Source: Octopus bimaculoides (lineage: Eukaryota). Taken from it: a stretch of 61,002 bases of DNA. The stretch covers positions 35,752,044 through 35,813,045 of the forward strand of contig NC_068998.1 of NCBI RefSeq assembly GCF_001194135.2, written 5' to 3'. Of the stretch, positions 12,345 through 61,002 are shown piece after piece; position 1 is the stretch's first letter; the number at the start of each line of letters is the position of its first letter. Position numbers and translations under genes: made by a program. Below the pieces are notes generated by a model that worked only from the letters and a program-made list of their open reading frames with translations, made no database searches and had not been told where the DNA came from.

Positions 12345-12970
12345 NNNNNNNNNNNNNNNNNNNNNNNNNNNNNNNNNNNNNNNNNNNNNNNNNNNNNNNN
12401 NNNNNNNNNNNNNNNNNNNNNNNNNNNNNNNNNNNNNNNNNNNNNNNNNNNNNNNNNNNNNNNNNNNNNNNNNNNNNNNNNNNNNNNNNNNNNNNNNNNN
12501 NNNNNNNNNNNNNNNNNNNNNNNNNNNNNNNNNNNNNNNNNNNNNNNNNNNNNNNNNNNNNNNNNNNNNNNNNNNNNNNNNNNNNNNNNNNNNNNNNNNN
12601 NNNNNNNNNNNNNNNNNNNNNNNNNNNNNNNNNNNNNNNNNNNNNNNNNNNNNNNNNNNNNNNNNNNNNNNNNNNNNNNNNNNNNNNNNNNNNNNNNNNN
12701 NNNNNNNNNNNNNNNNNNNNNNNNNNNNNNNNNNNNNNNNNNNNNNNNNNNNNNNNNNNNNNNNNNNNNNNNNNNNNNNNNNNNNNNNNNNNNNNNNNNN
12801 NNNNNNNNNNNNNNNNNNNNNNNNNNNNNNNNNNNNNNNNNNNNNNNNNNNNNNNNNNNNNNNNNNNNNNNNNNNNNNNNNNNNNNNNNNNNNNNNNNNN
12901 NNNNNNNNNTCTCCCTCACGCAAACACACACACACACATACAATATGATATGATATGATATTATATGATA

Positions 12971-13009
<39 letters not shown>

Positions 13010-13429
13010 AAATATTATACATACGTACCAAATGTAAGGAAGAAATAGTCATTCAGGACACGCAAAGCGAAAAGAACATTGAATAAAACCACCGCTATTT
13101 AAAAACAAATCAATTACAACTCTGGGTAAATATAACCTTGGGTAAATGTTTTATTTACCCCGGGTTATATTGAAGCAAAAACACGGCCGGCCACGTACGG
13201 ATGTGCAATGATTTGCGTAGCGTGAGTTTATTGTGATAACAAACGCAATGTGACACGTGATTCAGAAGTGGTGTCCTGTCAAAAGGCCTCTCACTGCTTC
13301 CTTCCAAAATAAAAATAAAAGCATAATTAAAAGATAACATTCGACAAATATTGAAGTATTGCATTCCTGCTATACATCAATACTATATCCAACATACGGG
13401 CATTATAAATGAGAGGTGTGTGAGTTAAT

Positions 13430-18544: not shown

Positions 18545-18990
18545 AGGCAAAAGGCCTAAAATTCTTGAGGAGGGGGCTGGTAGATTAGATCAACTCCAGT
18601 CCTCAACTAGTATTTATTTCGTCGATCCTACAAGGATCAAAGTCAATGTCAACCTCGGAGGCATTTGACCTCAGAAGGTAAAGACGAACGAAATGCCGGT
18701 AAGCATTTTGTCAGGCGTGATAACGACTCTGCCAGTCCGCCATCTTATCTCTTTTCTTTTAATAATGGTTTCAAATTTTGGCGCAGAAATAGCAATGTTT
18801 TTTTAGGGGAAGGGACAAGTCGATTACATCAACCTCAGTACTTCACTGATACTTATTCTATCGAGCTCGAAAGGATGGAAAGCGAAGTCGTCTTCGGCGG
18901 AATTTCAACTCAGAACGTAAAGACGGACGAAATGCTGCTAAGCATTTTTGCTCGGCGTGCAAATGATTCTGTCAGTTCGCCGCCTTAAGA
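18545..18990 (-). mobile_element. SINE family A, head-to-tail dimer
   Basis: Two successive units, each ending (+ strand) ..GAACTCAGAACGTAAAGACGGACGAAATGC..CAGTTCGCCGCC. Confidence 0.9.
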
Positions 18991-23744: not shown

Positions 23745-23985
23745 TAACTGTTGAGAAGGAGAGAGGCGCCTTCTGAGGTGCACCTGGCGGTCAGGACAAC
23801 CAAGATGTGTGGGGTTCCTCCTTTGTCCCTGCGAGTAACTCCTCCTTTTGGGGGTATTTTATTGTTTAATTGTATTGTTAATTGTCATTAGTTTATTGCT
23901 TACTCGATTTTTGTGTTAAATCTTAGTTTTGTTTTGTCCCTATTTGTTTTGTGTTCGGTCCTTGTGGCCAATAAAGAAACGAATA
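23745..23985 (+). mobile_element. Tx1/L1-like LINE 3' UTR remnant
   Basis: Ends CGGTCCTTGTGGCCAATAAA followed by (TTA)n, like the 3' end of the long element (CGGCCCTGGTGGCCAATAAA, ~50140). T-rich UTR. Confidence 0.6.
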
Positions 23986-23991
23986 TTATTA

Positions 23992-24045
<54 letters not shown>

Positions 24046-24369
24046 GAGAGAAGAGTTCTTTACTTTTGTATACGATTGACACAATCCATCACTAAGGTAA
24101 ACATAGCTGACGTAATCGATCACCAAGGCCAACTTAATGACAAAAAGCGCAACTCGAAAGTAACTTATTTATTTTCGCTTTGAACAATATTTCAGCATCT
24201 CGTGTGCCTTCAACAGGTTCAAAATAAATGTCAGTCTAATTCATTTTTTTAGTTCATATAAAGGACTGAAGTAACTCAGCAGAAATGTAATAGATAGAGA
24301 GGTGAGTTCTTTACTTTTGTTACGATAGATTAAATTGTTGGGAAAAATTCCTAGCAACAAATAACTTTA

Positions 24370-25030
24370 GATGCCAAGACTCTTCCTAAGTATCCTAGTT
24401 GTCTCTAATAATACCATTTTATACCTGTTTCCCCAATCTATTTATTCAAATCTTTAGGAATAGTTCCCAATGCACCAATAACTAAAGGGATACATTTTAT
24501 CAGTACTTTTTATAGCCTCTGTAACTCAATGACTAGGTTCTAGTACTTTGTTATTTTCTCTATACCACTCATGTTGACTTTTTCAACATTTGGGACTGTA
24601 AAGTCAATTATCTGGCACTTTTATTCTTTTTGCCTACTACTACTAAATCAGGCATTCTAGCTTCTATTACTCTGTCAGCCTGAATGTTAAAATCCCACAA
24701 CATCTTATATTCCTTACTTTCTAGTATTTTACTACGTTCATGTACATACCCCTTATCAGTATGGTCAAATCCTAGCTTTCTATATAACACTCAGTGGATT
24801 GCTCTCCCTAGATTTTCATGTCTTTTCTTGTATTCTTTCTGTGCCAGCATGCTATCTTCACTTACTATATGAGTAAGACTTTCCTCTTTTGATTTGCATA
24901 ACCTACATTGGGAATTTACCTGGTTTTTGTCTATCTTGGCTTTTATCCACTTAGTTCTCTCAATGCTTGATCTTGTACTGTTGCTAACAAACGTTCTACC
25001 TCCCTTTTCAGCCTTCATTTCCATGTTTTA

Positions 25031-25079
<49 letters not shown>

Positions 25080-25240
25080 NNNNNNNNNNNNNNNNNNNNN
25101 NNNNNNNNNNNNNNNNNNNNNNNNNNNNNNNNNNNNNNNNNNNNNNNNNNNNNNNNNNNNNNNNNNNNNNNNNNNNNNNNNNNNNNNNNNNNNNNNNNNN
25201 NNNNNNNNNNNNNNNNNNNNNNNNNNNNTCATTATTATTA

Positions 25241-25326
<86 letters not shown>

Positions 25327-25440
25327 TCTTGCAGCGATCTTTGGGAATCCACCTTGCAAAGCCTTCTCTTGCCAGTCAGATAAACTTTCTTCACTATTAC
25401 CTACACAGGAGGCCACATCTGCTCTAGCTAACTCCACACA
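24370..25440 (-). mobile_element. R4/Dong-like RLE LINE 3' fragment interrupted by an (AAT)n array
   Basis: WQEKALQG, then the array and gap, then MKAE..TKWIKAKID..CRLCKSKEESLTHIVS (CCHC), KEYKKRH, LWDFNIQADRVIEARMPDLVV (RLE). Confidence 0.9.
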
Positions 25441-25466
25441 GTCTTCTACTTATAATCCTCTTCTTC

Positions 25467-25517
<51 letters not shown>

Positions 25518-25538
25518 GTCATTATATTATTATCATCA

Positions 25539-25612
<74 letters not shown>

Positions 25613-28974: not shown

Positions 28975-30665
28975 CTCTAAATTTCTGTCCAAGGACTGAG
29001 GACACGCTGGGGCACCGCCGTTTACTTTGCTACACTTTCACTAAACCTCTTCTGATACGTTACATTTGGTGGCTGAGGGAGTTTGACTTTGCTGACCTCA
29101 TCTGTGTTTCTTGCCTAGAGGTTGGTTCATCCGGAACTCTTGAGAGGAGATTTAGTTTTGCTTTGAAAAATCCTACATCCACGTCATGCATGGTGGGAGG
29201 ATATTGAAGAGATGTGGGCCTTTGAAACAATTTTGCTGTTTGTGTAAGTGACAATGCCAAAGTTTGGAACAAATTTTTCTAGGATTTTTCAAATGTATAT
29301 TATTGCATATCTTTCCTACCTTCGCCCCAGAGAGTAGAGTCTTAACTCTTTCAGTCTCTTCCAATAGCTGATATACCGCATTGTATCGATCTCCCTTGTG
29401 TAGCTCCGCTGGTTCGCCTCGAGTTCCGTCGTTGATTTTACAGTGCTTGGTGGCCACAGTTGGGTGCAGTAATCCAGGCGGTTGAAAACGAAAGTCCTTC
29501 AGGGGACCATCAAGGTTTCCTTTTCCACTGTTTTAAACGTTCGAAAGATCCACCCGTCCAAACATCTGCATTTTATTGCCAAATTAGTAATATGCACCTG
29601 TAAAGATGCATCATTACTTAGGTCAATGCCCAGGTGACGCACTGATTTTGATTCAGGGATTGAAATCTCTTCAGTGTATCCCATCTGCTTTTCATTGAGC
29701 TTCCTGTGTTGGTAGCGCAAGGCTTGGAATTTTCCAGCATTAAACTGCATGTTATTTTACTCCGCCCACCTGTATATTACTTCCAACTTATGTTGCAGAA
29801 GCGCAACATCTTTAGGGTTCTGCATCCTCTGAGAGACTTTTGTATCTTCTGCATTGCTTGCAAGGGTAGGTACTTGAGCAGCTGAGTGCATGTCAGGGAG
29901 GGACGCTATGAATAGCAGTGGCCCCAGGACAGTTCCCTGTGAAACACCACTCGCTATTTGTATTTTCTTGGAGGTGGCCATGTTGACCACTATTACCTGA
30001 CTTCTATCTTTTAGAAAGTCATGTAGCCATTCTCCAAGTTTTCCAAATATGCTAAGATTTCGGAGCTTGTGACAAATCATACCATAGTCGACTCTGTCAA
30101 AGGCATTTATAAAGTCGAGATATATCACGTCCACATTTAAGTTGTTGAGCAGCTGCTTAAGCACCTAGTCGTAATGCTGCAAGAGCTCTGTCAGGCAGCT
30201 TCTATTCGGTCGAAAACCATGGTGGGTGTCAGTCAGCAAGTCATTCTCTTCAAGGAATGTAATTAATTTCCTTCGGACTAGTCATTCCATGATTTTGCTG
30301 AATTATGAGGTCAGAGAGATAGGCCTATATTTTTAGCCTCTGCACTGCTTTCTCCTTTATGGATAGGGCATATTATTCCCTCCTTTAGTTTATCTGGGAG
30401 CTTACCATTTGCAAAGAAGCTCTATAAAAGTAGTTGCAATAGTTTTTGCAAGGATTCGTTTGCATGACTTGAGGAGGATTGCTGGGAATCCATCGGGGCA
30501 AGCAGCTGGGTTTGCGTCTGTATCATTTATTGCTAGCATTACATCCTTTTCTTCGATGCTGATGTAATCAATTCTTACTGCCTACCATTCAGCTTCTGTA
30601 GCTGTGAAGAATTCTACAGGTTTGTGCGTATAAACTTTTGATTTATGATCTCTAGTATTTCAGTC
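28975..30665 (-). mobile_element. CR1/L2-group LINE, RT region to 3' end, pseudogenised
   Basis: PDGFPAILLK, YRPISLTS, HGFRPNRSCL, VDVIYLDF.NAFDRVD, SGVSQGTVLGPLLF, MQFNAGKFQ, GPHLFNILP and LDLLLSRVPDEP-type motifs. Confidence 0.95.
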
Positions 30666-43699: not shown

Positions 43700-44024
43700 T
43701 TTGTGGTTCGCGTAATCCGATCCGTTTCAGTCGGTCCTACGAAGGAATGTACAATTTAAATCTAAATGGTAAGAGTTTTCTCAGCACAGGAGACAGATTT
43801 CTTCTTACCAGAGAAAAGGATTTCTTCATGTATGACATCCAAGAATGCCTCCATGTCAACATTTTTCTAATTGCCTTTTTGTCCAATACCTTTTCTGGTG
43901 TATGTTGGTACCAAGCACCCATTACCTCGTATCCATACTTCCGGCATAGTAGCCAGTGAAGGTTTGGGGCTACCTTGTCATGTCTGTGTCTGTACTCCTT
44001 CTGCACAAGACTCTCACAAGCATT
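43700..44024 (-). mobile_element. 5'-truncated R4/Dong-like LINE beginning at an (AAT)n array
   Basis: (AAT)8, then ACESLVQKEYRHRHDKVAPNLHWLLCRKYG..WYQHTPEKVL. Confidence 0.85.
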
Positions 44025-44049
44025 ATTATTATTATTATTATTATTATAA

Positions 44050-44156
44050 CACAATTGAGAGGGTTGACGACGAGTAATTTCCTCTTTGGTCAAGGCCTTT
44101 TTGACCTTTTAAGGTTCCACCTGAAAAGGAAAGTGAGGCTGGAGAGGGAGTTCATT
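44050..44156 (+). mobile_element. Tx1-like LINE ORF2 C-terminal fragment starting after (TTA)n
   Basis: FGQGLFDLLRFHLKRKVRLERE matches the C-terminus of the long element (~49790-49830, FHLVRKMRVERE). Runs into a gap. Confidence 0.7.
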
Positions 44157-44649
44157 NNNNNNNNNNNNNNNNNNNNNNNNNNNNNNNNNNNNNNNNNNNN
44201 NNNNNNNNNNNNNNNNNNNNNNNNNNNNNNNNNNNNNNNNNNNNNNNNNNNNNNNNNNNNNNNNNNNNNNNNNNNNNNNNNNNNNNNNNNNNNNNNNNNN
44301 NNNNNNNNNNNNNNNNNNNNNNNNNNNNNNNNNNNNNNNNNNNNNNNNNNNNNNNNNNNNNNNNNNNNNNNNNNNNNNNNNNNNNNNNNNNNNNNNNNNN
44401 NNNNNNNNNNNNNNNNNNNNNNNNNNNNNNNNNNNNNNNNNNNNNNNNNNNNNNNNNNNNNNNNNNNNNNNNNNNNNNNNNNNNNNNNNNNNNNNNNNNN
44501 NNNNNNNNNNNNNNNNNNNNNNNNNNNNNNNNNNNNNNNNNNNNNNNNNNNNNNNNNNNNNNNNNNNNNNNNNNNNNNNNNNNNNNNNNNNNNNNNNNNN
44601 NNNNNNNNNNNNNNNNNNNNTAATCATTCGTAATACAGTGTAGGTAAAA

Positions 44650-44916
44650 ATGCACTGGAGTCTTTAGTCATCTGTCAAGTCACAACAAGGACCTCAGACA
44701 GATAATACTTTCCTTAAGATGTGCGCTATGACAAATAAGGCTGCTTTTTGCAAGACATCAATCTTACATGGGATTTCCAGTTGCCTTAAGAAGCCTTGAA
44801 GGAGGTGATTTGAAGCGTACCACCGAAAGCCTGATCATTGCTGCACAAGACCATGCTCTCTCTACCTATTCAGAGAAGTATAACATCTATAAAACTTCTG
44901 ACGCCTAGAAATGCAG

Positions 44917-44918
<2 letters not shown>
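44650..44918 (+). mobile_element. R4/Dong-like LINE fragment
   Basis: TESLIIAAQDHALST..KCR corresponds to the ETEGLIxAAQDQ..T motif just before the CCHC knuckle. Confidence 0.7.
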
Positions 44919-44950
<32 letters not shown>

Positions 44951-47215: not shown

Positions 47216-49900
47216 ATGGCCATATTAAGAGTAGGATTTTTAAATGTTCGAGTCCTGGGGTCGCCCTGGAAGCAAGGGAGCCTACTCAACGACCTCAAGT
47301 GTCTAGAATTGGATATAATTGCTGTCAGTGACACCAGAATTTCCAATACACACGCACTGGCCCCCATCTTCTACGACTATCAGATCTTTGTATCTGATAG
47401 TCGGCCGGAAATAGGGAGTGGAGTGGCAGTTGTATGTAGGAAAGAACTGGATCTTGAGGTAAAGTCGATCTTCCGGGATCCGGACGGGAATTTGGTGATC
47501 CTGGACGTAAGCAATGGTGAATGTAGTGTCTTTAGACTGGTGGCCGTCTATACCCCTACCGGAGCCAAACGACCGGGTTTCTTTAGGCGTCTGGAAGACT
47601 TTCTAGGTACGTCTCACCCTTTACTGTTAGTAGGGAACTGGAACGGAATCTTAGATCAACGCTGGAATTGTGTGGGAGTAACTGATAGACGAGCAGGGTC
47701 CAAAAGCCTCGAGCACTTGGTCAGCCAGTTAAAACTGTCTGGCAGGTACCGACGAGATTTCCCTGATGCGCTAGTGTGGACCTGGGCCAACCGCCTAGAG
47801 TCATCCAGATCGTATATAGATAGGGTTTTCACTTGAAAAATAGATAGTAATAGTGTAAGATGTCCAATTTTTCAAACGGTCGCCTAATCAGACCATAAGT
47901 TTGTAATCTGTACGGTCGACCTAGATTAGACGCGTAGGTTAGGACCCGAGTAGGGGAAGCGGAACAAGTCGTTTCCAGCACGTAAGGCTTACAGGGACCG
48001 AGTCAACAATTTAGTTAAGCAAAAGTTGACAGTGGGGGTGGGGCTCAACAACTGGTGGTGGGCGGTTCTCAAAAAAGAGATCAGAGTAATATCGATAAGG
48101 TTTAGCAAAGAAATAGCGTTAGAAAAAATAGAAAGGAGGAGGGGTTAGTAGCTAAATTAAGCAAGGCTATTTCTAGAGGCACTGCAACCGACGTGCTAGC
48201 AGCGAGAATGGCATTAGACCAGTTCTTCAAACATAAAGGTTGCATTGTCAGAGCTAAGGCGCGTGCTCTAAGAAACGAGGGGATCAAAGCTGTTCGATGG
48301 TCCCGCGTGACAGAGGCGCAGCGTGGTAACAAACCACAGTTCGGTCTTTGACAGACCGAGACGGATACGAGCTGAGCAATTCCAGGCAGTTGCGTGAGAC
48401 CTTTCGCCATCACTTTGCTCGGTTGTTCGGTGAGAGTGGCGTGGCGGAAATGGTGGCAGACTTCAGTCCCTACCTCGACGGATTACCGCATCTATCGACG
48501 GCCGACGCTGAGGGCTATGAAAGGCAGGTAACTTCAGCCGAAATTCAAGATGCCCTTGTCAGCTGCACGAAGCGCAAGTAATCCAGTTTAGATGGTCTGC
48601 CCTATGAACTTTACGTAAATATGCCAGACGTATTCTCCGATCTCCTCAAAGCGCTCTACTGCAACTGGCAGCAGAACGGGAGTATTCCCAGTTCTGTAAG
48701 CCGGGCATAGTGACGCTGAAAGACGTAAACAAGGGAGACACATTAGATAACTTCAGGTCCATAATTCTGTTTAAGACAAGGTTTAAGATTGTGGCCAAGG
48801 TATTAGCGAAGAGATTGGCGCTTGTCGTCGAGGATTTGATTGGAGAGGTACAAACCTGCGCAATCCCGATTAGGTCCATACACGACAACCTCCACCTCAT
48901 GCGATACATCATAGAAAGCGTAGAGTGTAAACCTGGCTTCGGTGGGGCGCTAATCAATTTAGATCAATCGAAAGCATTCGATAGGGTCGACCATCGATAT
49001 CTAGAGGCAGTCCTCAAAGCGGCTGGCTTCGGCCTCGTCTTCAGAGGTTGGATCGCTGCAATGCACAGCGGCATCTGCTCAGTGGTCAAAGTTAATGGCC
49101 ACCTCTCGGAACCGTTTTAGATCTCCCGATTGGTCCTTCAAGAGTGCCTTCTCTCCTCCCTTCTGTAGGCATTGACTCTTAAGCCTTTACTACGGAAGCT
49201 GGAGCTGCTACAGGACATCCCGCTCATGCCAGGACGCAGAAGGGCTGTGTCGGCTTATGCGGACGACATCACCGTGATTGGTGTCGGACACCTCAGAAAT
49301 CAAGGTGTTCGGTACATCATTGGACTAATATGCAAAGTTGACAGGAGCAAAACTTAACCCGGAAAAGTCGGTAGGCATACAACTCGGCACCTGGAGAGGC
49401 AAGTCCATGCTGTCCAACAGCGTCGTTGGGCGCTGGACGGACGGACCGGGAAAGTTGCTTGGGGTTTGGTTCGGACCAGACCTCCAGGTGGATAAGAATT
49501 GAGACAAGATGACGAGTAGGGTAGCCAGTCTCACCCAGAAATGAGCTATGAGGAATCTGTCACTGAAAGAGGTGGCGAATGCCAGTGTCTTTGCATTACT
49601 GACTTGTGGAGTTATGTTGAACAGCTGTTATCACATGTTGGACGGATCCGGCTATCGGCCGAGTCTATAGTGAAGATCGATCTGCTGCCTTCCATTGGTC
49701 CGATAGCAGTAGCGAAAGAGGTGGACCAGGCTGAAAGGACTGAAGACGGACACTTTCCTCTTCGGCCAATCCCTCATCAACTTTTTCAAATTTCACTTGG
49801 TAAGGAAGATGAGGGTGGAGAGAGAAGTGCTGCCCCCATCAGTACATATGCTAAAAGGTGGGTGAATATAGCGAAAATGTGAGTGGACCTACTCTAATAA
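47216..49900 (+). pseudogene. Tx1-like ORF2: APE endonuclease + reverse transcriptase
   Basis: GFLNVR, DIIAVSDTR, VAVY.P, VGNWN and SYIDRV (APE). PGLDGLPYELY, KIVAKVLAKRL, LINLDQSKAFDRVDH and SAYADDITV (RT). Confidence 0.95.
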
Positions 49901-55794: not shown

Positions 55795-56180
55795 GTTATA
55801 GGCACAAGGCCTGAAATTTGGGAGATGGGCAGTAGCCGATTACGTCGACCTCAGAGTTCAACTGGTACTTATTGCATCAACCCCGAAAGAATGAAAAGCA
55901 AAGCTGACATCGGTAGGATTGAACTCATAACATAAAGAGCCGGAAGAAATTTCGAAAAGGATTTTGTATGATGCACTAACGTTTTTTCCAGTTCACTGGC
56001 TTAATAATTATTTCAAATTTTCGCACCAGGCCAGCAATTTCGGTGGAGGGGTTAGTCTATTATATCGGTCGCAGTGCGTAACGGATACTCCTAGGCGGAG
56101 TTTTAACTCAGAACGAAAAGCCGAAAGAAATACCGCAAAGCATTTTGTCCGGCGTGCTTATGGTTCTGCCAGCCTGCCAA
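55795..56180 (-). mobile_element. SINE family A dimer
   Basis: Two successive family-A units. Confidence 0.9.
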
Positions 56181-56221
56181 CTTCATGATGATGATGATGG
56201 TGGTGGTAGTGGTGATGATGA

Positions 56222-57653
56222 TAATAAGAGAATTAGACCAAAGCCAGACATACAAATACTTAGGAATCCATAAACTAGATACGATAAAACACACACACAA
56301 ATGTAAGAAAAAATTTTTTAAAAGAATACTATAGACGAGTAAGATTAATAATGAAAACAGAGCACAATGCGAAAAACAAGATAATAGCTCTCAACATTCT
56401 AGCCGCCCCAGGTGGTATAAGTTACAGCTCTAATATCCTTAACTGTACACTAAATGGACTAATCAAAATGGACAGGAAAACAAGAAAAATAATGACAGGA
56501 TTTAAGATGCACCACCCAAAATCTGACATAGAACGATTATATATACAACGTATCGAAGGTGGTAGAGGCTTTATACAGCTAGAAAACTATTACAAAATAA
56601 CTACCATAGGACTACAAAAATATCTACTTCAGAAGCAAGGAAAACTAATACAAACAGCCACAAAACACGAACAAAACAAAAAAGTGTTTTCAGTCTTTAA
56701 GGAAGCTGACAAATACAAGAAAGAAGTCATAGTACCTAACAACTATGGAGAAATAGAAGAAACAACAAAAGCTGTAAAACAACTGAAATCAAAACCAAAA
56801 CTGGAACAGCAATGGATCATGATAAAACGATGGCAAGAAAAGCCCCTTCATGGCAAATAATAGGCTAAACGCAAAAGAAATAGACAAAGCAAAATCCCAA
56901 CAATGGATGAGAAGCTCAGGACTCAAAGCAGAGAGTGAAGGATTTTTAATTTCAGCACAAGATCAAAGCCTTCCTACCAGAAATTACCAAAACTTGCAGA
57001 ATATGTGGAGATGGAGAAGAAACAATAAATCATGTTTCTTTGGCTGCCCAGTCCTGGCTAAGAAGGAATATATTCACAGACACCACAGAGTCGGGACCTA
57101 TATACATTGGAGGCTATGCCAACATTATGGAATAACAACAGAAAAAAGGTGGTTTAGGCACACGTCTGAAAAGTTCACAGAAAATGAGAAAGCAACCATA
57201 CTATGGGATATGCTAATACACACAGACAGAGAAATCGAGGCCAAATAGCCGGATATAGTTGTCAGATCACAAAAAAAAATGCTTTTTAATCAATGTATCA
57301 ATACCAACAGATGTCAATGTTTCTCTAAAAGAAACGGAGAAACTTTCAAAATACAAAAACCTGGAAATAGAGGTAACTCAAATATGGAGTCTAAAAACAG
57401 AAAGAATTCCTATCATAGTAGACGTGTTAGGTATGATAAAAAAATATTCAAACAAATACATAACAAAAACACCAGGATTAACAAGTATATATAATATACA
57501 GAAAATAACACTACTAGGCACCGTGCTCATCCTACGTAAAACACTTTCAATACAGTAAAAATAAGAGCTTCACAACAAACCACAGCACATACCCAAGGTA
57601 CACGGAAGCTGCACTCGATAGTGCAGTGAAAGCACGTCATAAAAATAAGACTA

Positions 57654-57656
<3 letters not shown>
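56222..57656 (+). mobile_element. 5'-truncated R4/Dong-like RLE LINE ending in (AAT)n
   Basis: TYKYLG, MDRKTRK, LY..R.EGGRG, WQEKPLHG, GLKAESEGFLISAQDQSLPTR, CRICGDGEETINHV (CCHC), PDIVV..LINVSIP (RLE) and QKITLLGT..ILRKTL. Confidence 0.96.
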
Positions 57657-57722
<66 letters not shown>

Positions 57723-57821
57723 CTGGTGTACCCTTATCAGACGGGTAGTCATGATGGGTATACTGGGCTTCGTATATTTTACCCCAGTGTCGCTTTGATG
57801 GCATGCACTGCTCTCTCACTC
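57723..57821 (+). mobile_element. 5'-truncated copy of family F between (AAT)n arrays
   Basis: Near-identical to 9549-9647 and ends at the same base (CTCACTC) before AAT repeats. Confidence 0.9.
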
Positions 57822-57906
57822 AATAATAATAATAATGATGATAATAATAATGATCATGGTAATGATAATGATAATGATGATAATAATGATAATAATAATA
57901 ATAATA

Positions 57907-57999
<93 letters not shown>

Positions 58000-58001
<2 letters not shown>

Positions 58002-58880
58002 AAATATGGTCCGGTGTCTTCTGCCGAACCGGGGTCATCCCTTGACCTTAGGGTCACAGCAGGCCCTCATCTCATGGAGAGTACACGGCGTAAAATGTAT
58101 TCGGAACCTAGCAACACTATTTTCTGAAGTTCTCCCACGTTAACACTGCAAGGGAGTCTATTGAGCTGCTTATCAAAGCCCTTTTTAATTAGCCCTAACA
58201 CTCCAGTCACCACTGGTGCTGTGCTGCTTTTCATTCCCCACACCTTGGTCATTTCTATTTCTAGGTCTTTGTACTTAAATAACTTCTCAATTTCTATAAT
58301 GGACACATTTCTCTCTGATGGTACTGTCACATCTATCATTAAGCATTTCTTATTCTTCCCATCTTTGATGATTATGTCCGGCCTGTTTGCCTTGGTTTCT
58401 TTATCGGTGTTGATTGGCATGTCCCAGTGTACTGTTACATCATCTTTTCAGGTTTATGCTGGTACCATCCTTCTGAAGTTGGAAGCTGGTATTGTTTACA
58501 TATCTTCCAATAGATATATAGTGCTACTCTATCGTGTCTATGAATATATTCGGTTTTTGCAAGCGCTGTGCATCCAGTTAAGATGTGGTCCACTGTTTCA
58601 TCCTGCTCATGACACATTCTGCATTTCGGATCAGTGCCATCGTTCATGATTTTGTTGTGGTAAGCCCTGGTTGCCAAGCTTTGCTCTTGTGCTGCTATTA
58701 TATAAAAAAAAAACCTTCGGTTTCAGCCTTCAGTCATGAGCTCATCCACACATGAGTGTCTCGGTTTTCTACGTCTGGTTTGTTCACTCTACATGGGTAT
58801 CGGCCATGCATCGGTTTTTCTAGCCATTCTTCTTTGCTCTTCTTCTGGGCTTGTTTTCAGCACAATCAACTGGCAAATTA
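58000..58880 (-). mobile_element. 5'-truncated R4/Dong-like LINE, second subfamily
   Basis: LKAET..IIAAQEQSLATR, CRMCHEQDETVDHILTGC and RPDIII..CLMIDVTVP..EK..KY. Poly(A)+(AAT)n tail, with (AAT)n at the 5' junction. Confidence 0.95.
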
Positions 58881-58889
58881 TTATTATTA

Positions 58890-59377
58890 TTTTATGTTTG
58901 ACTTTTGTTTTGCATTTGTACAAGTTGGATCCAAGTCTCACCCAGAGACCTCAAGAGACAACAAGTTAGAAGTTCATGTAGGTGTTATGCCTAGGGTACC
59001 ATATATTTGGATTTGTACAGTTTTGTTCAAGTGAATGTTTAAGAAACCATAAGAAAATTATGTGTTTGCTTTAAAATTTGAGATCACATAGACAGTATTT
59101 TACGTAGGATATGGGCAGTTCCCATGAGCACTGTCTTTTGAACTTCAGCCATTTTGGGGTTTCCTGGTATCTGAGCTAGGTAGTAATCAGCCCGTTTCGC
59201 TGTCATTCTCAGGGCACCTATGACAATAGGTATTGTTTTCGTCTTCAGATTCCACATTTTGCTAATTTCTATTTCGAGATCTTTATATTTGCTCAGTTTT
59301 TGATAGGTCTTGACAGATACGTTTATATCGATTGGGACAGTCATATCAATGAGGAGGCATGATTTTTGTCTGAAGTC

Positions 59378-59378
<1 letters not shown>
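58890..59378 (-). mobile_element. 5'-truncated R4/Dong-like LINE, third subfamily
   Basis: CLLIDMTVP.D.NVSVK..QKLSKYKDLEIE..QKTVLMGTAHILRKIL. (AAT)n at both ends. Confidence 0.93.
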
Positions 59379-59436
<58 letters not shown>

Positions 59437-59599
59437 ACAAATAATATAAAAGAGTAAATTAAAACAACAACAAAACAACTAGCATCTTCCCGATACCCGA
59501 GGGCCACCAACATGGGTCAATGAAGGAAACCCACGGATCTTGGAACGCCTTAACACCCAAGTGCCAATGTAGATTTCTCACGAAGGTACAACTTAATGT

Positions 59600-59664
59600 G
59601 CAGAAGCAGCGGCAACAGCAGTAGTAGTTGTTGTTGTTGTTGCTCTTGTAATAGTAGTGGTAGC

Positions 59665-59723
<59 letters not shown>

Positions 59724-59725
59724 CG

Positions 59726-59799
<74 letters not shown>

Positions 59800-59900
59800 T
59801 GTTGTTGTTGTTATACTAGTTGGGGTAATTGTAATAGTAGTATTAGAAATAATAGTAGTTGTTATTGTAGATGTAGTGTATGTGGATGTACGTGTGTGTT

Positions 59901-59943
<43 letters not shown>

Positions 59944-59969
59944 GTGTGTGTGCGTGTGTNNNNNNNNNN

Positions 59970-60004
<35 letters not shown>

Positions 60005-60035
60005 GTGTGTGTGCGTGTGTGAGTGTGTGTGTGGT
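59600..60035. repeat. (AGT)/(AGC)/(GTT) and (TG)n microsatellites
   Basis: Direct inspection. Confidence 0.92.
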
Positions 60036-60367
60036 ATAGAGGGTTAGAGGGGAATGATCTTGCGGCATGCAAAAATGGAAATTATTCTACCAGAAGACAA
60101 ACCAAAAGAAAGTTTCAGCAACATGGCTACGGCTGAGTTGGGGAAAATACCTCAGGGAACAGAGACCTGAACACACAGAATACAGATACGATTGTTTCTC
60201 ACAAATGTAACAAAGTGAGTTGAAAAACAAAACTACGATTAAATGAAGTTATCCAAATAATGTGTAAACAAAAACTCCCTCTGTGGATATTTACAATTTA
60301 ATAACATTATGCTTCAGTAAAAATCAACTGATCGATATTTTATGACGATATAATCAATATAAACGAC

Positions 60368-60470
60368 ATGGATTGGAGTGGATCTGGTCTTCAAAGCCAA
60401 CTAGTGACAGGAACGGACATGTTTCGGTTTTATTCAGCTCCCTCAGTGGAGGATATTCTCTACTCATTTG
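60368..60470 (+). CDS. Candidate coding exon MDWSGSGLQSQLVTGTDMFRFYSAPSVEDILYSF (or a 33-nt microexon 60438-60470)
   Basis: Consensus donor TTTG|GTAAGA at 60470. ATG in GACATGG context at 60368. Alternative acceptor GTTTTATTCAG at 60437 gives a phase 1-1 exon. Unique sequence with no homology evidence. Confidence 0.3.
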
Positions 60471-61002
60471 GTAAGACTAAGATTGATTAATATATCTATA
60501 AAAGCAGAGGGAATGTGGTATTGATTATAATTGTAAACACTGGCCGAGGGAAAGTATATCAGGTGAGATTTCTGTATACTAAATACAAATCTGGTATGGA
60601 CACACACACACACACACACACACGTGTGTGTATGTGTGCATATATATTTATAATACGTTGAGAAACTTCGACCAGCTAGGATTGTCATGCAAGCAATTAA
60701 TAGATAAAACTTCTTCAGTTGGTGTAAGAAATCTTCAACTAAAATATAATCAACAACAAGAAATGCAGAAACCACGAATGAGTTCATAAAATCTTTTTGA
60801 AAATTAAGTACACAAACACGGTTGTGCGTGAGCGCGTATGAGTATGTGTTGGTATATACATATCTATATATATATATATATATATACTTATACTCACATA
60901 CATATACATACACACACATACACACACATGCTTACACTCATACACAGACACATATACATATTTATATACATACAGACATACACAGGTTATTAAAGGGAAA
61001 GA

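What the first reader, a model, noticed from the sequence alone, without database searches (positions are those of the whole stretch)
56222..59440. Chain of divergent R4/Dong-like retrotransposons strung together on (AAT)n microsatellites
Seen: three RLE-type LINE copies with clearly different protein sequences, plus a truncated family-F element. All but one of their junctions are (AAT)n arrays on the element's sense strand. The exception is the 5' end at 56222, which has only GATAATAAG. The 58890-59378 copy is joined head-to-tail to the 58000-58880 copy through a short AAT array. The same polarity holds at 44025-44048 and 25030-25330. Established: silkworm Dong (R4 clade) inserts into TAA repeats. 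Inference: several octopod Dong-like lineages share this target, each insertion leaves AAT repeats at its ends that serve as new landing sites, and so self-seeding clusters form. This could contribute to the AAT load of the genome.
Basis: partly seen in the sequence, partly recalled or inferred. Interest (0 to 1): 0.72.

Follow-up and report, generated by a model that had tools for sequence, protein, structure and literature searches.

The report
Dong-type LINEs chained on AAT repeats
This stretch holds four dead, 5'-truncated copies of retrotransposons that insert specifically into (TAA/AAT)n microsatellites, so they pile up head-to-tail on such repeats; this is real, but it is the known behaviour of the Dong/R4 group of LINEs.

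Summary
Window 56222-59440 holds three 5'-truncated LINE copies (A +, C -, D -) that encode a CCHC finger and a restriction-like endonuclease (RLE). They are only 34-47% identical to each other. A 100-bp fragment B of a non-coding element is also present. Seven of the eight junctions are (AAT)n arrays that read AAT on the element's own sense strand.

The same protein family in about 80 contigs from unrelated animal genomes shows the same signature. Sense (AAT)n lies 70-150 nt after the stop codon in 39 of 71 copies. It lies at the 5' edge of 19 of 42 truncated copies, against 3.2% of random windows. It also lies directly in front of full-length copies. Head-to-tail chains recur in those contigs. 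The arrays are therefore insertion targets, not just 3' tails.

Architecture, target and polarity match Dong (R4 clade). Published work already reports the (TAA)n specificity of Dong in insects, molluscs and cnidarians, and Dong-R4 LINEs are already annotated as abundant in octopus.

The claim that insertions raise the genome's AAT load is untested. Flanking arrays are similar in length on both sides, as expected from splitting an existing array.

A 3'-UTR hairpin supported by covariation, about 40 nt before the AAT tail, was noticed in passing.

The parts
56014..56186 (+). SINE-like repeat whose 3' trinucleotide run carries A's 5' junction
   Evidence: Sequence. A related copy lies at 18653-18746.
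56187..56229 (+). (ATG/GTG/TGA)n run ending in GATAATAAG. This is the 5' flank of copy A, with only two TAA units.
56222..57656 (+). Copy A: a 5'-truncated, decayed Dong-like LINE. It runs from the end of the RT and thumb through the linker, CCHC (about 56995-57050) and RLE, with the stop at 57556-57558 and the 3' UTR at 57559-57656.
   Evidence: HMM 738-1194, domain E-values down to 9e-52; tblastn; weak zf-RVT hit; degenerate hairpin at 57586-57628, E 0.36
57657..57722 (+). (AAT)22 between A and B, sense for both
57723..57822 (+). Fragment B: the last 100 bp of the non-coding 'family F' element. The fuller copy at 9102-9648 is itself flanked by AAT arrays on both sides.
   Evidence: blastn 93% over 100 bp; sequence
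57822..57906 (+). Mixed (AAT/GAT)n array, sense for A and B
57907..57969 (-). (AAT)21 on the minus strand, forming the 3' flank of copy C. The repeat polarity switches at 57906/57907.
57970..57997 (-). A28 run (minus sense) between C's 3' UTR and the AAT array
57998..58876 (-). Copy C: a 5'-truncated Dong-like LINE. It runs from the linker through CCHC and RLE, with the stop at 58067-58069 and the 3' UTR at 57998-58066.
   Evidence: HMM 930-1194; 460 homologues at 50-75% identity; CCHC and RPD..D..E.K motifs
58020..58059 (-). Conserved 3'-UTR hairpin of C (ACCCTAAGGTCAAGGGATGACCCCGG)
   Evidence: Best hit in the whole window of model R1, which was built without window sequences: 22.9 bits, E 6e-4
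58877..58891 (-). (AAT)5 joining D's 3' end to C's 5' end, head-to-tail
58892..59377 (-). Copy D: a 5'-truncated Dong-like LINE. It holds the last 97 aa of the RLE with an open frame (59084-59377) and a 192-nt 3' UTR.
   Evidence: HMM 1098-1194, E 1e-34; tblastn
58921..58961 (-). Conserved 3'-UTR hairpin of D (CTTGAGGTCTCTGGGTGAGACTTGG)
   Evidence: Second-best R1 hit in the window: 17.3 bits, E 0.02
59378..59436 (-). (AAT)19 on the minus strand, forming the 5' flank of D
24046..25027 (-). Further copy E outside the finding. The coding part is 24441-25018. It lies between ATT arrays 23984-24045 and 25028-25079.
43869..44021 (-). Further fragment (HMM 1023-1073) with (AAT)8-9 on its 5' side at 44022-44048

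Best explanation
The region is a graveyard of target-specific non-LTR retrotransposons of the Dong type (R4 clade, RLE-bearing LINEs).

Proposed mechanism:
1. The element protein has an RT, a CCHC finger and a C-terminal PD-(D/E)XK endonuclease. It recognises (TAA)n/(TTA)n DNA and nicks it.
2. The freed 3' end of the TTA strand primes reverse transcription on the (UAA)n-tailed element RNA (target-primed reverse transcription). This fixes the orientation, so the element's sense strand always reads AAT on both sides.
3. Reverse transcription often stops early, which gives 5'-truncated copies.
4. An insertion splits the array into two halves that remain valid targets, and other Dong lineages share that target. 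Later insertions therefore land next to earlier ones and build head-to-tail chains (D-AAT-C, A-AAT-B).
5. A conserved 3'-UTR hairpin about 40 nt before the tail is the likely RNA handle for the RT.

Shown here: the domain content, AAT arrays of fixed polarity on both sides of truncated and full-length copies in many genomes, the recurrence of chains, and the covarying hairpin.

Inferred: the cleavage specificity, the priming and annealing step, the order of insertions, and clade membership.
For: Domains:
- Invariant C..C..H..C and RPD / D / E.K motifs.
- The profile matches the RLE and zinc finger of solved R2 proteins, E 7.5e-5.
- An intact 1101-aa relative is collinear with R2 over 770 residues, E 1e-35.
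- Pfam finds RVT_1 plus zf-RVT, and neither an APE domain nor an N-terminal zinc finger.

Target:
- In the window, 7 of 8 junctions are sense AAT.
- In about 80 loci from other genomes, the first microsatellite after the stop is sense AAT in 39 of 71 copies and antisense in 1.
- 19 of 42 truncated 5' edges carry sense AAT, against 3.2% of random windows, p 9e-18.
- Full-length copies L002, L010, L050, L067 and L073 have (AAT)n 128-176 nt before the ATG, at the start of the 5' UTR.
- 5' and 3' arrays co-occur: both present 13, 3' only 7, 5' only 2, neither 7.

Chains:
- L002, on a 2.8-Mb contig, carries three copies strung on AAT arrays.
- L006, L077, L011 and L059 also carry chains.

Hairpin:
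- RNAalifold on a MAFFT alignment finds a 6-bp stem in which 5 of 6 pairs show compensatory changes.
- 88% of cells are paired, against 68% after shuffling and 49% or less after sliding.
- A model built without window sequences ranks the 3' UTRs of C and D first and second in the whole window. It hits 45 sites in the loci, 43 of them on the sense strand just after the stop.

Literature:
- Dong targets (TAA)n in Bombyx, Anopheles and the snail Biomphalaria (PMC3812793).
- Sense (TAA)7 directly precedes the Dong 5' end (PMC3774820).
- Dong-R4 LINEs are abundant and recently active in Octopus (PMC13282606, PMC8967140).
Against: - No RT tree with Dong (L08889) or R4 (U29445) could be built, so another RLE clade is not formally excluded. 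HERO has some microsatellite-specific families (PMC4640811).
- A's 5' junction has only two TAA units.
- About 45% of truncated 5' edges in other genomes show no AAT within 60 bp. Part of this is imprecise homology edges. Part is lineages flanked by other repeats such as (ATG)n.
- C has an A28 run between its 3' UTR and the AAT array.
- The arrays of opposite polarity that meet at 57906/57907 are not explained by a single target array.
- No cleavage or activity data exist, and every window copy is dead.
Confidence: 0.85

Rival explanations
1. The arrays are only 3' tails. These would be LINEs that end in a (TAA)n tail, as the Drosophila I factor does, and insert at random. On this view the AAT on the 5' sides is just the tail of a neighbour that happens to lie upstream.
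For: Sense AAT at the 3' end is the most constant feature, 39 of 71 copies. Seven truncated copies have 3' AAT but no 5' AAT, copy A among them.
Against: 5' edges at many different truncation points are directly preceded by sense AAT in 19 of 42 copies, against a 3.2% background. Full-length copies start right after an AAT array. Many 5' arrays are not preceded by another element. Even where they are, landing on a neighbour's tail is itself target preference.
Confidence: 0.04
2. The chain is an assembly artefact. A short-read scaffolder joined unrelated AAT-flanked repeats through their shared microsatellites.
For: N gaps sit inside or beside AAT arrays (25080-25228, 44158-44620, 59961-59970).
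Against: The D-C joint is a 15-bp array, and the other arrays are 57-66 bp, which ordinary reads can span. The same chains occur in a 2.8-Mb contig from another organism (L002) and in several independent contigs. Each single element-array junction is independent of scaffolding.
Confidence: 0.07
3. The mechanism and target are the same, but the clade is different. The elements would belong to HERO or another RLE lineage that independently targets (TAA)n, not to R4/Dong.
For: No reference-based tree was possible. HERO contains microsatellite-specific families (PMC4640811). Pfam and PDB profile searches did not detect the N-terminal Myb/SANT-like domain reported for R4/Dong. Rfam found no 5' HDV-like ribozyme in full-length relatives.
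Against: - The (TAA)n target, the sense polarity, and the single ORF without N-terminal zinc fingers all fit Dong.
- Close relatives occur in Exaiptasia, corals and other taxa in which R4/Dong-like elements with a TAA target were described (PMC7998251).
- In Octopus, Dong-R4 is the abundant RLE clade: 1129 recent insertions against 13 for Hero (PMC13282606).
- Full-length relatives share a conserved N-terminal W..EE..W..NKLANVRRDI domain of the size and position of the reported Myb-like domain.
Confidence: 0.1
4. The endonuclease has little sequence specificity. The AAT preference and fixed polarity would come from annealing of the (UAA)n RNA tail to any nicked or broken TTA-strand end, giving microhomology-driven capture at fragile AT-rich microsatellites.
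For: Polarity is exactly what tail annealing predicts. Some relatives sit in other A/T-rich repeats or (ATG)n. A's 5' end lies in a TGA/TAA run.
Against: RLE LINEs of the R2, R4, NeSL and CRE clades are mostly sequence-specific through their proteins (PMC4640811). The near-exclusive use of AAT across phyla argues for protein recognition. This cannot be separated with sequence data alone.
Confidence: 0.15

Closest known systems
Dong (Bombyx mori) and its relatives DongAg (Anopheles) and DongBg (Biomphalaria glabrata), R4 clade
   Same: - A single ORF with the RT followed by CCHC and a restriction-like endonuclease.
- Insertion into (TAA)n with sense-strand TAA on both sides.
- Frequent 5' truncation.
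- Presence in molluscs, cnidarians and insects (PMC3812793, PMC7998251, PMC3774820).
   Different: Nothing essential was found to differ. Sequence relatedness to the reference Dong could not be measured here. The window copies are fragments of several lineages only 34-47% identical to each other. Copy C has an A28 run before the AAT array.
Dong-R4 LINE families annotated in Octopus vulgaris and O. bimaculoides repeat libraries
   Same: If the window is from an octopus, these copies are most likely members of those families. The libraries list 5 recently active families and 1129 near-full-length insertions averaging about 4.2 kb (PMC13282606). Full-length relatives here are about 3.7-3.9 kb.
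   Different: Those papers never mention the terms AAT or TAA in a full-text search. The species of the window was not verified.
R4 (Ascaris) and R2 (arthropods, vertebrates)
   Same: RLE-type LINEs with the same RT-CCHC-RLE order. The R2 structures are the closest solved proteins. Both use target-primed reverse transcription at a specific repeated target.
   Different: Their target is 28S rDNA, not a microsatellite. R2 has N-terminal zinc-finger and Myb domains that Pfam did not detect here.
Drosophila I factor (TAA-tailed LINE)
   Same: A (TAA)n repeat at the 3' end of the element. This comparison is from my own knowledge.
   Different: The I factor has an APE endonuclease and RNase H, does not require TAA at the 5' side, and is not array-specific. 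Here AAT flanks both sides and the nuclease is an RLE.
Eel UnaL2 and other 'stringent' LINEs (3' stem-loop plus short tandem-repeat tail)
   Same: A conserved 3'-UTR hairpin at a fixed distance from a repeat tail, plausibly read by the RT. Non-autonomous riders could share that 3' end. This comparison is from my own knowledge.
   Different: UnaL2 is an APE-type L2-clade element with a (TGTAA)n tail and no microsatellite target specificity.
Other microsatellite-targeting LINEs: Waldo (ACAY)n, Mino (AC)n, Kibi (TC)n, Koshi (TTC)n, Togen (TG)n
   Same: The same strategy of hiding in simple repeats, and the same expected clustering (PMC3812793, PMC4640811).
   Different: They use different repeat units and mostly belong to APE-type clades (R1, Tx1). 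Togen is NeSL-like.

Membership tests
RLE-type LINE (R2 group: R2, R4/Dong, NeSL, CRE, HERO) | RT followed by a CCHC motif and a C-terminal PD-(D/E)XK restriction-like endonuclease, with no APE domain | tested here: met
   Invariant CCHC and RPD/D/E.K columns. The profile hits the R2 RLE and finger in solved structures, E 7.5e-5. A full-length relative is collinear with R2, E 1e-35. Pfam finds only RVT_1 and zf-RVT.
Dong lineage of the R4 clade | Insertion into (TAA)n microsatellites, with the repeat on both sides and in sense polarity | tested here: met
   In the window, 7 of 8 junctions. In relatives, 39 of 71 at the 3' end, 19 of 42 at truncated 5' edges against a 3.2% background, and AAT directly in front of full-length copies.
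Dong lineage of the R4 clade | RT (or post-YADD) phylogeny groups the element with Dong L08889 and R4 U29445 | not testable with these tools
   No reference sequences were reachable, and the Dong paper PMC309301 is not held. Support is indirect only: close relatives in taxa where Dong-like elements were described (PMC7998251).
Dong lineage of the R4 clade | No N-terminal zinc fingers, and a divergent N-terminal Myb/SANT-like domain (PMC7998251) | tested here: inconclusive
   The window copies lack the N-terminus. Full-length relatives have no zinc-finger hit and share a conserved W..EE..W..NKLANVRRDI domain. Neither Pfam nor a profile search against PDB identifies that domain as Myb/SANT. The paper needed HHpred to see it.
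Dong lineage of the R4 clade | 5' HDV-like self-cleaving ribozyme that cuts at the (TAA)n/element junction (PMC3774820) | tested here: inconclusive
   All window copies are 5'-truncated. In full-length relatives Rfam finds nothing at E<=0.1. A conserved 5'-UTR core YCGG-GTTGGYRT-CCGR with a covarying 4-bp helix exists in L002, L010, L050 and L061 but was not modelled.
I-factor-like TAA-tailed LINE | APE endonuclease, with the TAA repeat at the 3' end only and non-specific targets | tested here: not met
   The nuclease is an RLE rather than an APE, and AAT is enriched at 5' junctions.
R2 | Specific insertion into 28S rDNA, with N-terminal zinc-finger and Myb domains | tested here: not met
   The flanks are AAT arrays, not rDNA. 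No N-terminal zinc finger is detected. Similarity to R2 is distant.

The most novel reading that the evidence does not exclude
Dong-type insertions may do more than occupy AAT arrays. They may also make and lengthen them through RNA-templated (UAA)n tails and RT slippage. Each insertion would then add target sequence, clusters would grow autocatalytically, and Dong activity, together with non-autonomous riders such as family F that share the target, would be a main driver of the AAT-microsatellite load and of TE islands in this genome. The deeply conserved 3'-UTR hairpin plus tail would be the minimal cassette needed for this.
Probability: 0.15. Interest if true: 0.5.

Novelty: already known. 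Interest (0 to 1): 0.22.

Why it matters
As it stands this is a correct annotation, not a discovery. It explains why AAT arrays in this genome are so often bordered by LINE fragments. In this window, 9 of the 12 arrays of at least 24 bp, and half of all AAT-array bases, abut such a fragment. It also warns that AAT-flanked repeats are weak points for assembly.

Two by-products may be useful:
- A cross-phylum, quantitative confirmation that the AAT arrays are targets on both sides, with fixed polarity.
- A covariation-supported 3'-UTR hairpin that could serve as a sensitive marker of Dong 3' ends and as a candidate RT-recognition element. This matters to people who study RLE LINEs as site-specific integration tools.

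Tried and rejected
- Pfam on the window peptides gave only sub-threshold zf-RVT hits. The RLE has no Pfam model, so it was identified through motifs and the R2 structures instead.
- Rfam (E<=0.1) on five loci with full-length relatives found no HDV-like ribozyme or any other family.
- The N-terminal domain of relatives got no credible match from Pfam at E<=10 or from a PDB profile search.
- The Dong reference paper PMC309301 is not held, and no reference Dong/R4 protein could be obtained, so no tree was built.
- SINE tails as the seed of AAT arrays: too few complete SINE 3' ends lie in the window to say. Only A's 5' junction clearly lies in a SINE-adjacent trinucleotide run.
- Fragment 25327-25467 between two ATT arrays: its minus-strand translation contains DWQEKALQGGFPK, which resembles the family's W.EK.LHGQYPK motif. 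The HMM does not detect it at E<=1, so it is not claimed.
- The R1 hit at 13130-13172 (E 0.09) has no AAT array downstream and is treated as chance or very old.
- RT-like fragments at 29895-30566 (-) and 48719-49201 (+) score weakly against the family HMM and have no AAT flanks. They are probably other LINE clades and serve as an informal internal control.
Full report
**What is in the sequence**

I read 55800-61002, translated the four pieces in six frames and compared them with the rest of the window.

- Copy A (56222-57656, +) runs from the end of the RT (YKYLG) through a linker, a C..C..H..C motif and a C-terminal domain to a stop at 57556. A 98-nt 3' UTR follows. The copy has several frameshifts and stops.
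- (AAT)22 follows at 57657-57722.
- B (57723-57822) is a 100-bp non-coding piece.
- A mixed (AAT/GAT)n run reaches 57906.
- At 57907 the repeat polarity flips to (ATT)21, followed by T28.
- Copy C (57998-58876) lies on the minus strand.
- (ATT)5 follows at 58877-58891.
- Copy D (58892-59377, minus) comes next.
- (ATT)19 closes the chain at 59378-59436.

Read on the minus strand this is (AAT)19 - D - (AAT)5 - C - A28 - (AAT)21, a head-to-tail chain.

A profile HMM built from four intact relatives places A at positions 738-1194 of 1194, C at 930-1194 and D at 1098-1194. All three are 5'-truncated at different points and complete at the 3' end. They share only 34-47% protein identity.

Seven of the eight junctions are AAT arrays on the element's sense strand. 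The exception is A's 5' end, GATAATAAG, inside a (ATG/GTG/TGA)n run that follows a SINE-like repeat.

Only 2.8% of random 75-bp windows of this window contain any AAT/ATT array of at least 4 units. Seven of eight junctions, with polarity, is therefore far beyond chance (p about 1e-12).

**Other copies in the window**

- Copy E has its coding part at 24441-25018 (-). It lies between ATT arrays 23984-24045 and 25028-25079.
- Fragment 43869-44021 (-) has (ATT)8-9 at its 5' side.
- A pair at 44697-44774 (-) and 44795-44920 (+) lies beside (ATT)10 at 44917-44946.
- B is the last 100 bp of a 547-bp non-coding element at 9102-9648, which is itself bracketed by AAT arrays.
- Nine of the 12 AAT arrays of at least 24 bp, and half of all AAT-array bases in the window, directly abut one of these elements.

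**What the elements are**

- The C peptide finds 460 homologues at 50-75% identity in cnidarians, echinoderms and many unnamed eukaryotic contigs.
- Their alignment has invariant C..C..H..C and RPD / D / E.K(Y)K columns.
- A profile of that alignment matches the zinc finger and the restriction-like endonuclease of solved R2 retrotransposon proteins (E 7.5e-5).
- Intact ORFs of 1101-1227 aa were recovered from related loci. They carry RVT_1 in the middle, zf-RVT near the C-terminus, and no APE or N-terminal zinc finger.
- One of these ORFs is collinear with R2 proteins over about 770 residues (E 1e-35).

These are therefore RLE-type LINEs of the R2 group, but not R2 itself.

**Target or tail?**

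A scan of metagenome contigs gave 80 loci from host-associated samples. Two more came from exact-protein look-ups.

- 3' ends: the first microsatellite after the stop codon is sense (AAT)n, 70-150 nt downstream, in 39 of 71 copies. It is antisense in one.
- 5' edges of truncated copies: where upstream sequence is available, 19 of 42 have sense (AAT)>=4 within 60 bp, 4 have antisense, and 19 have none. Random windows of the same loci carry sense AAT in 3.2% of cases (p 9e-18).
- Full-length copies: L002, L010, L050, L067 and L073 have an AAT array 128-176 nt before the ATG, that is, right at the start of the 5' UTR.
- Co-occurrence: 5' and 3' arrays occur together (both 13, 3' only 7, 5' only 2, neither 7), and their lengths show no systematic asymmetry.
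- Chains: head-to-tail chains through short AAT arrays recur in L002 (three copies on a 2.8-Mb contig), L006, L077, L011 and L059/L075.

The arrays are therefore insertion targets used in one orientation, not merely element tails. Chaining is a regular outcome in many genomes.

**Comparison with what is known**

- (TAA)n-specific insertion is the defining property of Dong (R4 clade). It is reported for Bombyx, Anopheles and the snail Biomphalaria (PMC3812793, citing Kojima and Fujiwara 2004 and Xiong and Eickbush 1993).
[quoted passage not shown] It describes R4/Dong as RT plus REL-endonuclease, without N-terminal zinc fingers but with a divergent Myb-like domain (PMC7998251).
- The Eickbush laboratory used a (TAA)7-Dong co-transcript to show a 5' HDV-like ribozyme that cuts at the junction (PMC3774820). 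This also documents sense TAA directly upstream of Dong.
- Dong-R4 LINEs are annotated as abundant and recently active in octopus genomes (PMC13282606, PMC8967140), although the words AAT and TAA do not occur in those papers.

The window's elements meet every Dong feature I could test: architecture, target and polarity. Placement on an RT tree was not possible, because no reference sequences were reachable. The Myb-like domain and the 5' ribozyme were inconclusive. A different RLE clade with the same target, such as HERO, keeps about a 10% chance.

**Mechanism**

The best-supported model has three steps:
- An RLE nick in the (TAA)n/(TTA)n duplex.
- Priming from the TTA-strand 3' end on the (UAA)n-tailed RNA.
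- Frequent premature termination.

An insertion splits an array into two halves that both remain targets, and several lineages share that target, so later insertions land beside earlier ones.

The strong form is not supported by anything here. It says that insertions create AAT and raise the genome's AAT load. The flanking arrays look like the two halves of a pre-existing array. The genome is rich in trinucleotide arrays of every kind, and at least A's upstream flank belongs to a SINE-associated repeat run.

The meeting of arrays of opposite polarity at 57906/57907 shows that the plus-strand cluster (A, B) and the minus-strand cluster (C, D) used different arrays, or that an inversion or an antisense insertion occurred. 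I cannot tell which.

**A by-product: a conserved 3'-UTR hairpin**

- The 3' UTRs of most lineages share a motif CCYWAGG - 6-bp stem - UGGNU loop - stem' - CYCGG, lying 36-46 nt before the AAT tail.
- MAFFT plus RNAalifold recovers the stem, and 5 of 6 pairs show compensatory changes.
- Pairing is 88%, against 68% after shuffling and 49% or less when the partner is slid. There are 29 double-change cells, against 9.6 expected.
- A covariance model built only from non-window sequences ranks the 3' UTRs of C (E 6e-4) and D (E 0.02) first and second in the whole 61-kb window. A's decayed UTR ranks fourth.
- The model hits 45 sites in the loci, 43 of them on the sense strand just after the stop.

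This hairpin is a plausible RT-recognition element. I did not find it described, but I did not search the literature for it specifically.

**Verdict**

However, it describes the known biology of Dong-type LINEs, in a taxon where such elements are already annotated. Interest is low to moderate. The AAT-load speculation and the hairpin are the only parts that could add something new.

Noticed in passing
window 58020-58059 (-), 58921-58961 (-), 57586-57628 (+, degenerate); loci L001-L082 just after the ORF stop: A conserved 3'-UTR hairpin (CCYWAGG - 6-bp stem - UGGNU - stem' - CYCGG) lies 36-46 nt before the AAT tail. It is shared by copies from many unrelated genomes and is supported by compensatory changes. 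A model built without window sequences finds it. It is a likely RT-recognition element.
   Followed up: yes
L002 3223-3383; L010 51-226; L050 40-197; L061 1-146: Full-length relatives start right after (AAT)n with a 130-180-nt 5' UTR. This UTR contains a conserved core YCGG-GTTGGYRT-CCGR whose 4-bp helix covaries (CCGG/CCGG, CCAG/CTGG, TCGG/CCGA). It may be the Dong-type HDV-like ribozyme, but Rfam found nothing.
   Followed up: partly
window 9102-9648 and 57723-57822: The non-coding 'family F' element is bracketed by AAT arrays. It is present once as 547 bp and once as its last 100 bp (93% identical). It behaves like a 5'-truncating retroposon with the same target. It is either a non-autonomous rider on the Dong machinery or the long 3' UTR of another lineage.
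   Followed up: partly
window 44641-44946: A minus-strand C-terminal piece (44697-44774) lies next to a plus-strand piece of a more upstream part of the protein (44795-44920, HMM 968-1009), beside (ATT)10. The layout resembles a 5' inversion by twin priming.
   Followed up: partly
window 44049-44157 (-): This is probably the 3' UTR end of yet another copy. A hairpin GGTCAA/TTGACC (44088-44106) lies 39 nt before the AAT array at 44022-44048. The copy runs into the N gap and is chained head-to-tail to fragment 43869-44021. It was seen by eye only, and the covariance model did not report it.
   Followed up: partly
L038 about 5115-5150; L059/L075 about 4120-4140; L077 about 2040-2060: Some relatives, apparently from insect-associated samples, are followed by (ATG)n or mixed ATG/AAT arrays instead of pure AAT. 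This hints at shifts of target repeat within the family.
   Followed up: no
window 25080-25228, 44158-44620, 59961-59970, about 12700-12909: Runs of N sit inside or beside microsatellites, twice within AAT arrays next to Dong-like copies. The true arrays, and possibly further copies, are longer than assembled.
   Followed up: no
window 25231-25610: (ATT)32, a 141-bp fragment, then (ATC)n(ATT)23. The fragment's minus-strand translation contains DWQEKALQGGFPK, which resembles the family's W.EK.LHGQYPK motif, but the HMM does not detect it. If real, it would be an unexplained 3'-truncated piece ending in AAT. The sequence after 25610 looks like a SINE 3' end that abuts the AAT array.
   Followed up: partly
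window 24046-24083 and 24298-24335: The last 37 nt or so of copy E's 3' UTR (minus sense ...CAAAAGTAAAGAACTC.TCTCT) is repeated about 250 nt upstream. This may be an internal 3'-UTR duplication or a second, very short copy joined without an AAT spacer.
   Followed up: no
window 29895-30566 (-) and 48719-49201 (+): RT-domain fragments score weakly against the family HMM and have no AAT arrays at their edges. They are probably other LINE clades.
   Followed up: no
L002, L010, L015, L050, L061, L067, L073 (first about 150 aa of the ORF): A conserved N-terminal domain K..W(T).EE..V..A(F)Y...TY..W....NKLANVRRDI.K.KRLTD.E...IR lies in the position of the Myb/SANT-like domain reported for R4/Dong. 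Pfam and a PDB profile search do not recognise it.
   Followed up: partly
window 59590-59830 and throughout: The window is extremely rich in long trinucleotide arrays of many units, including (AGT)n/(AGC)n right next to the cluster and GTA, AAG, ACC, AAC and TGA elsewhere. AAT is only one of many abundant repeat types here.
   Followed up: no
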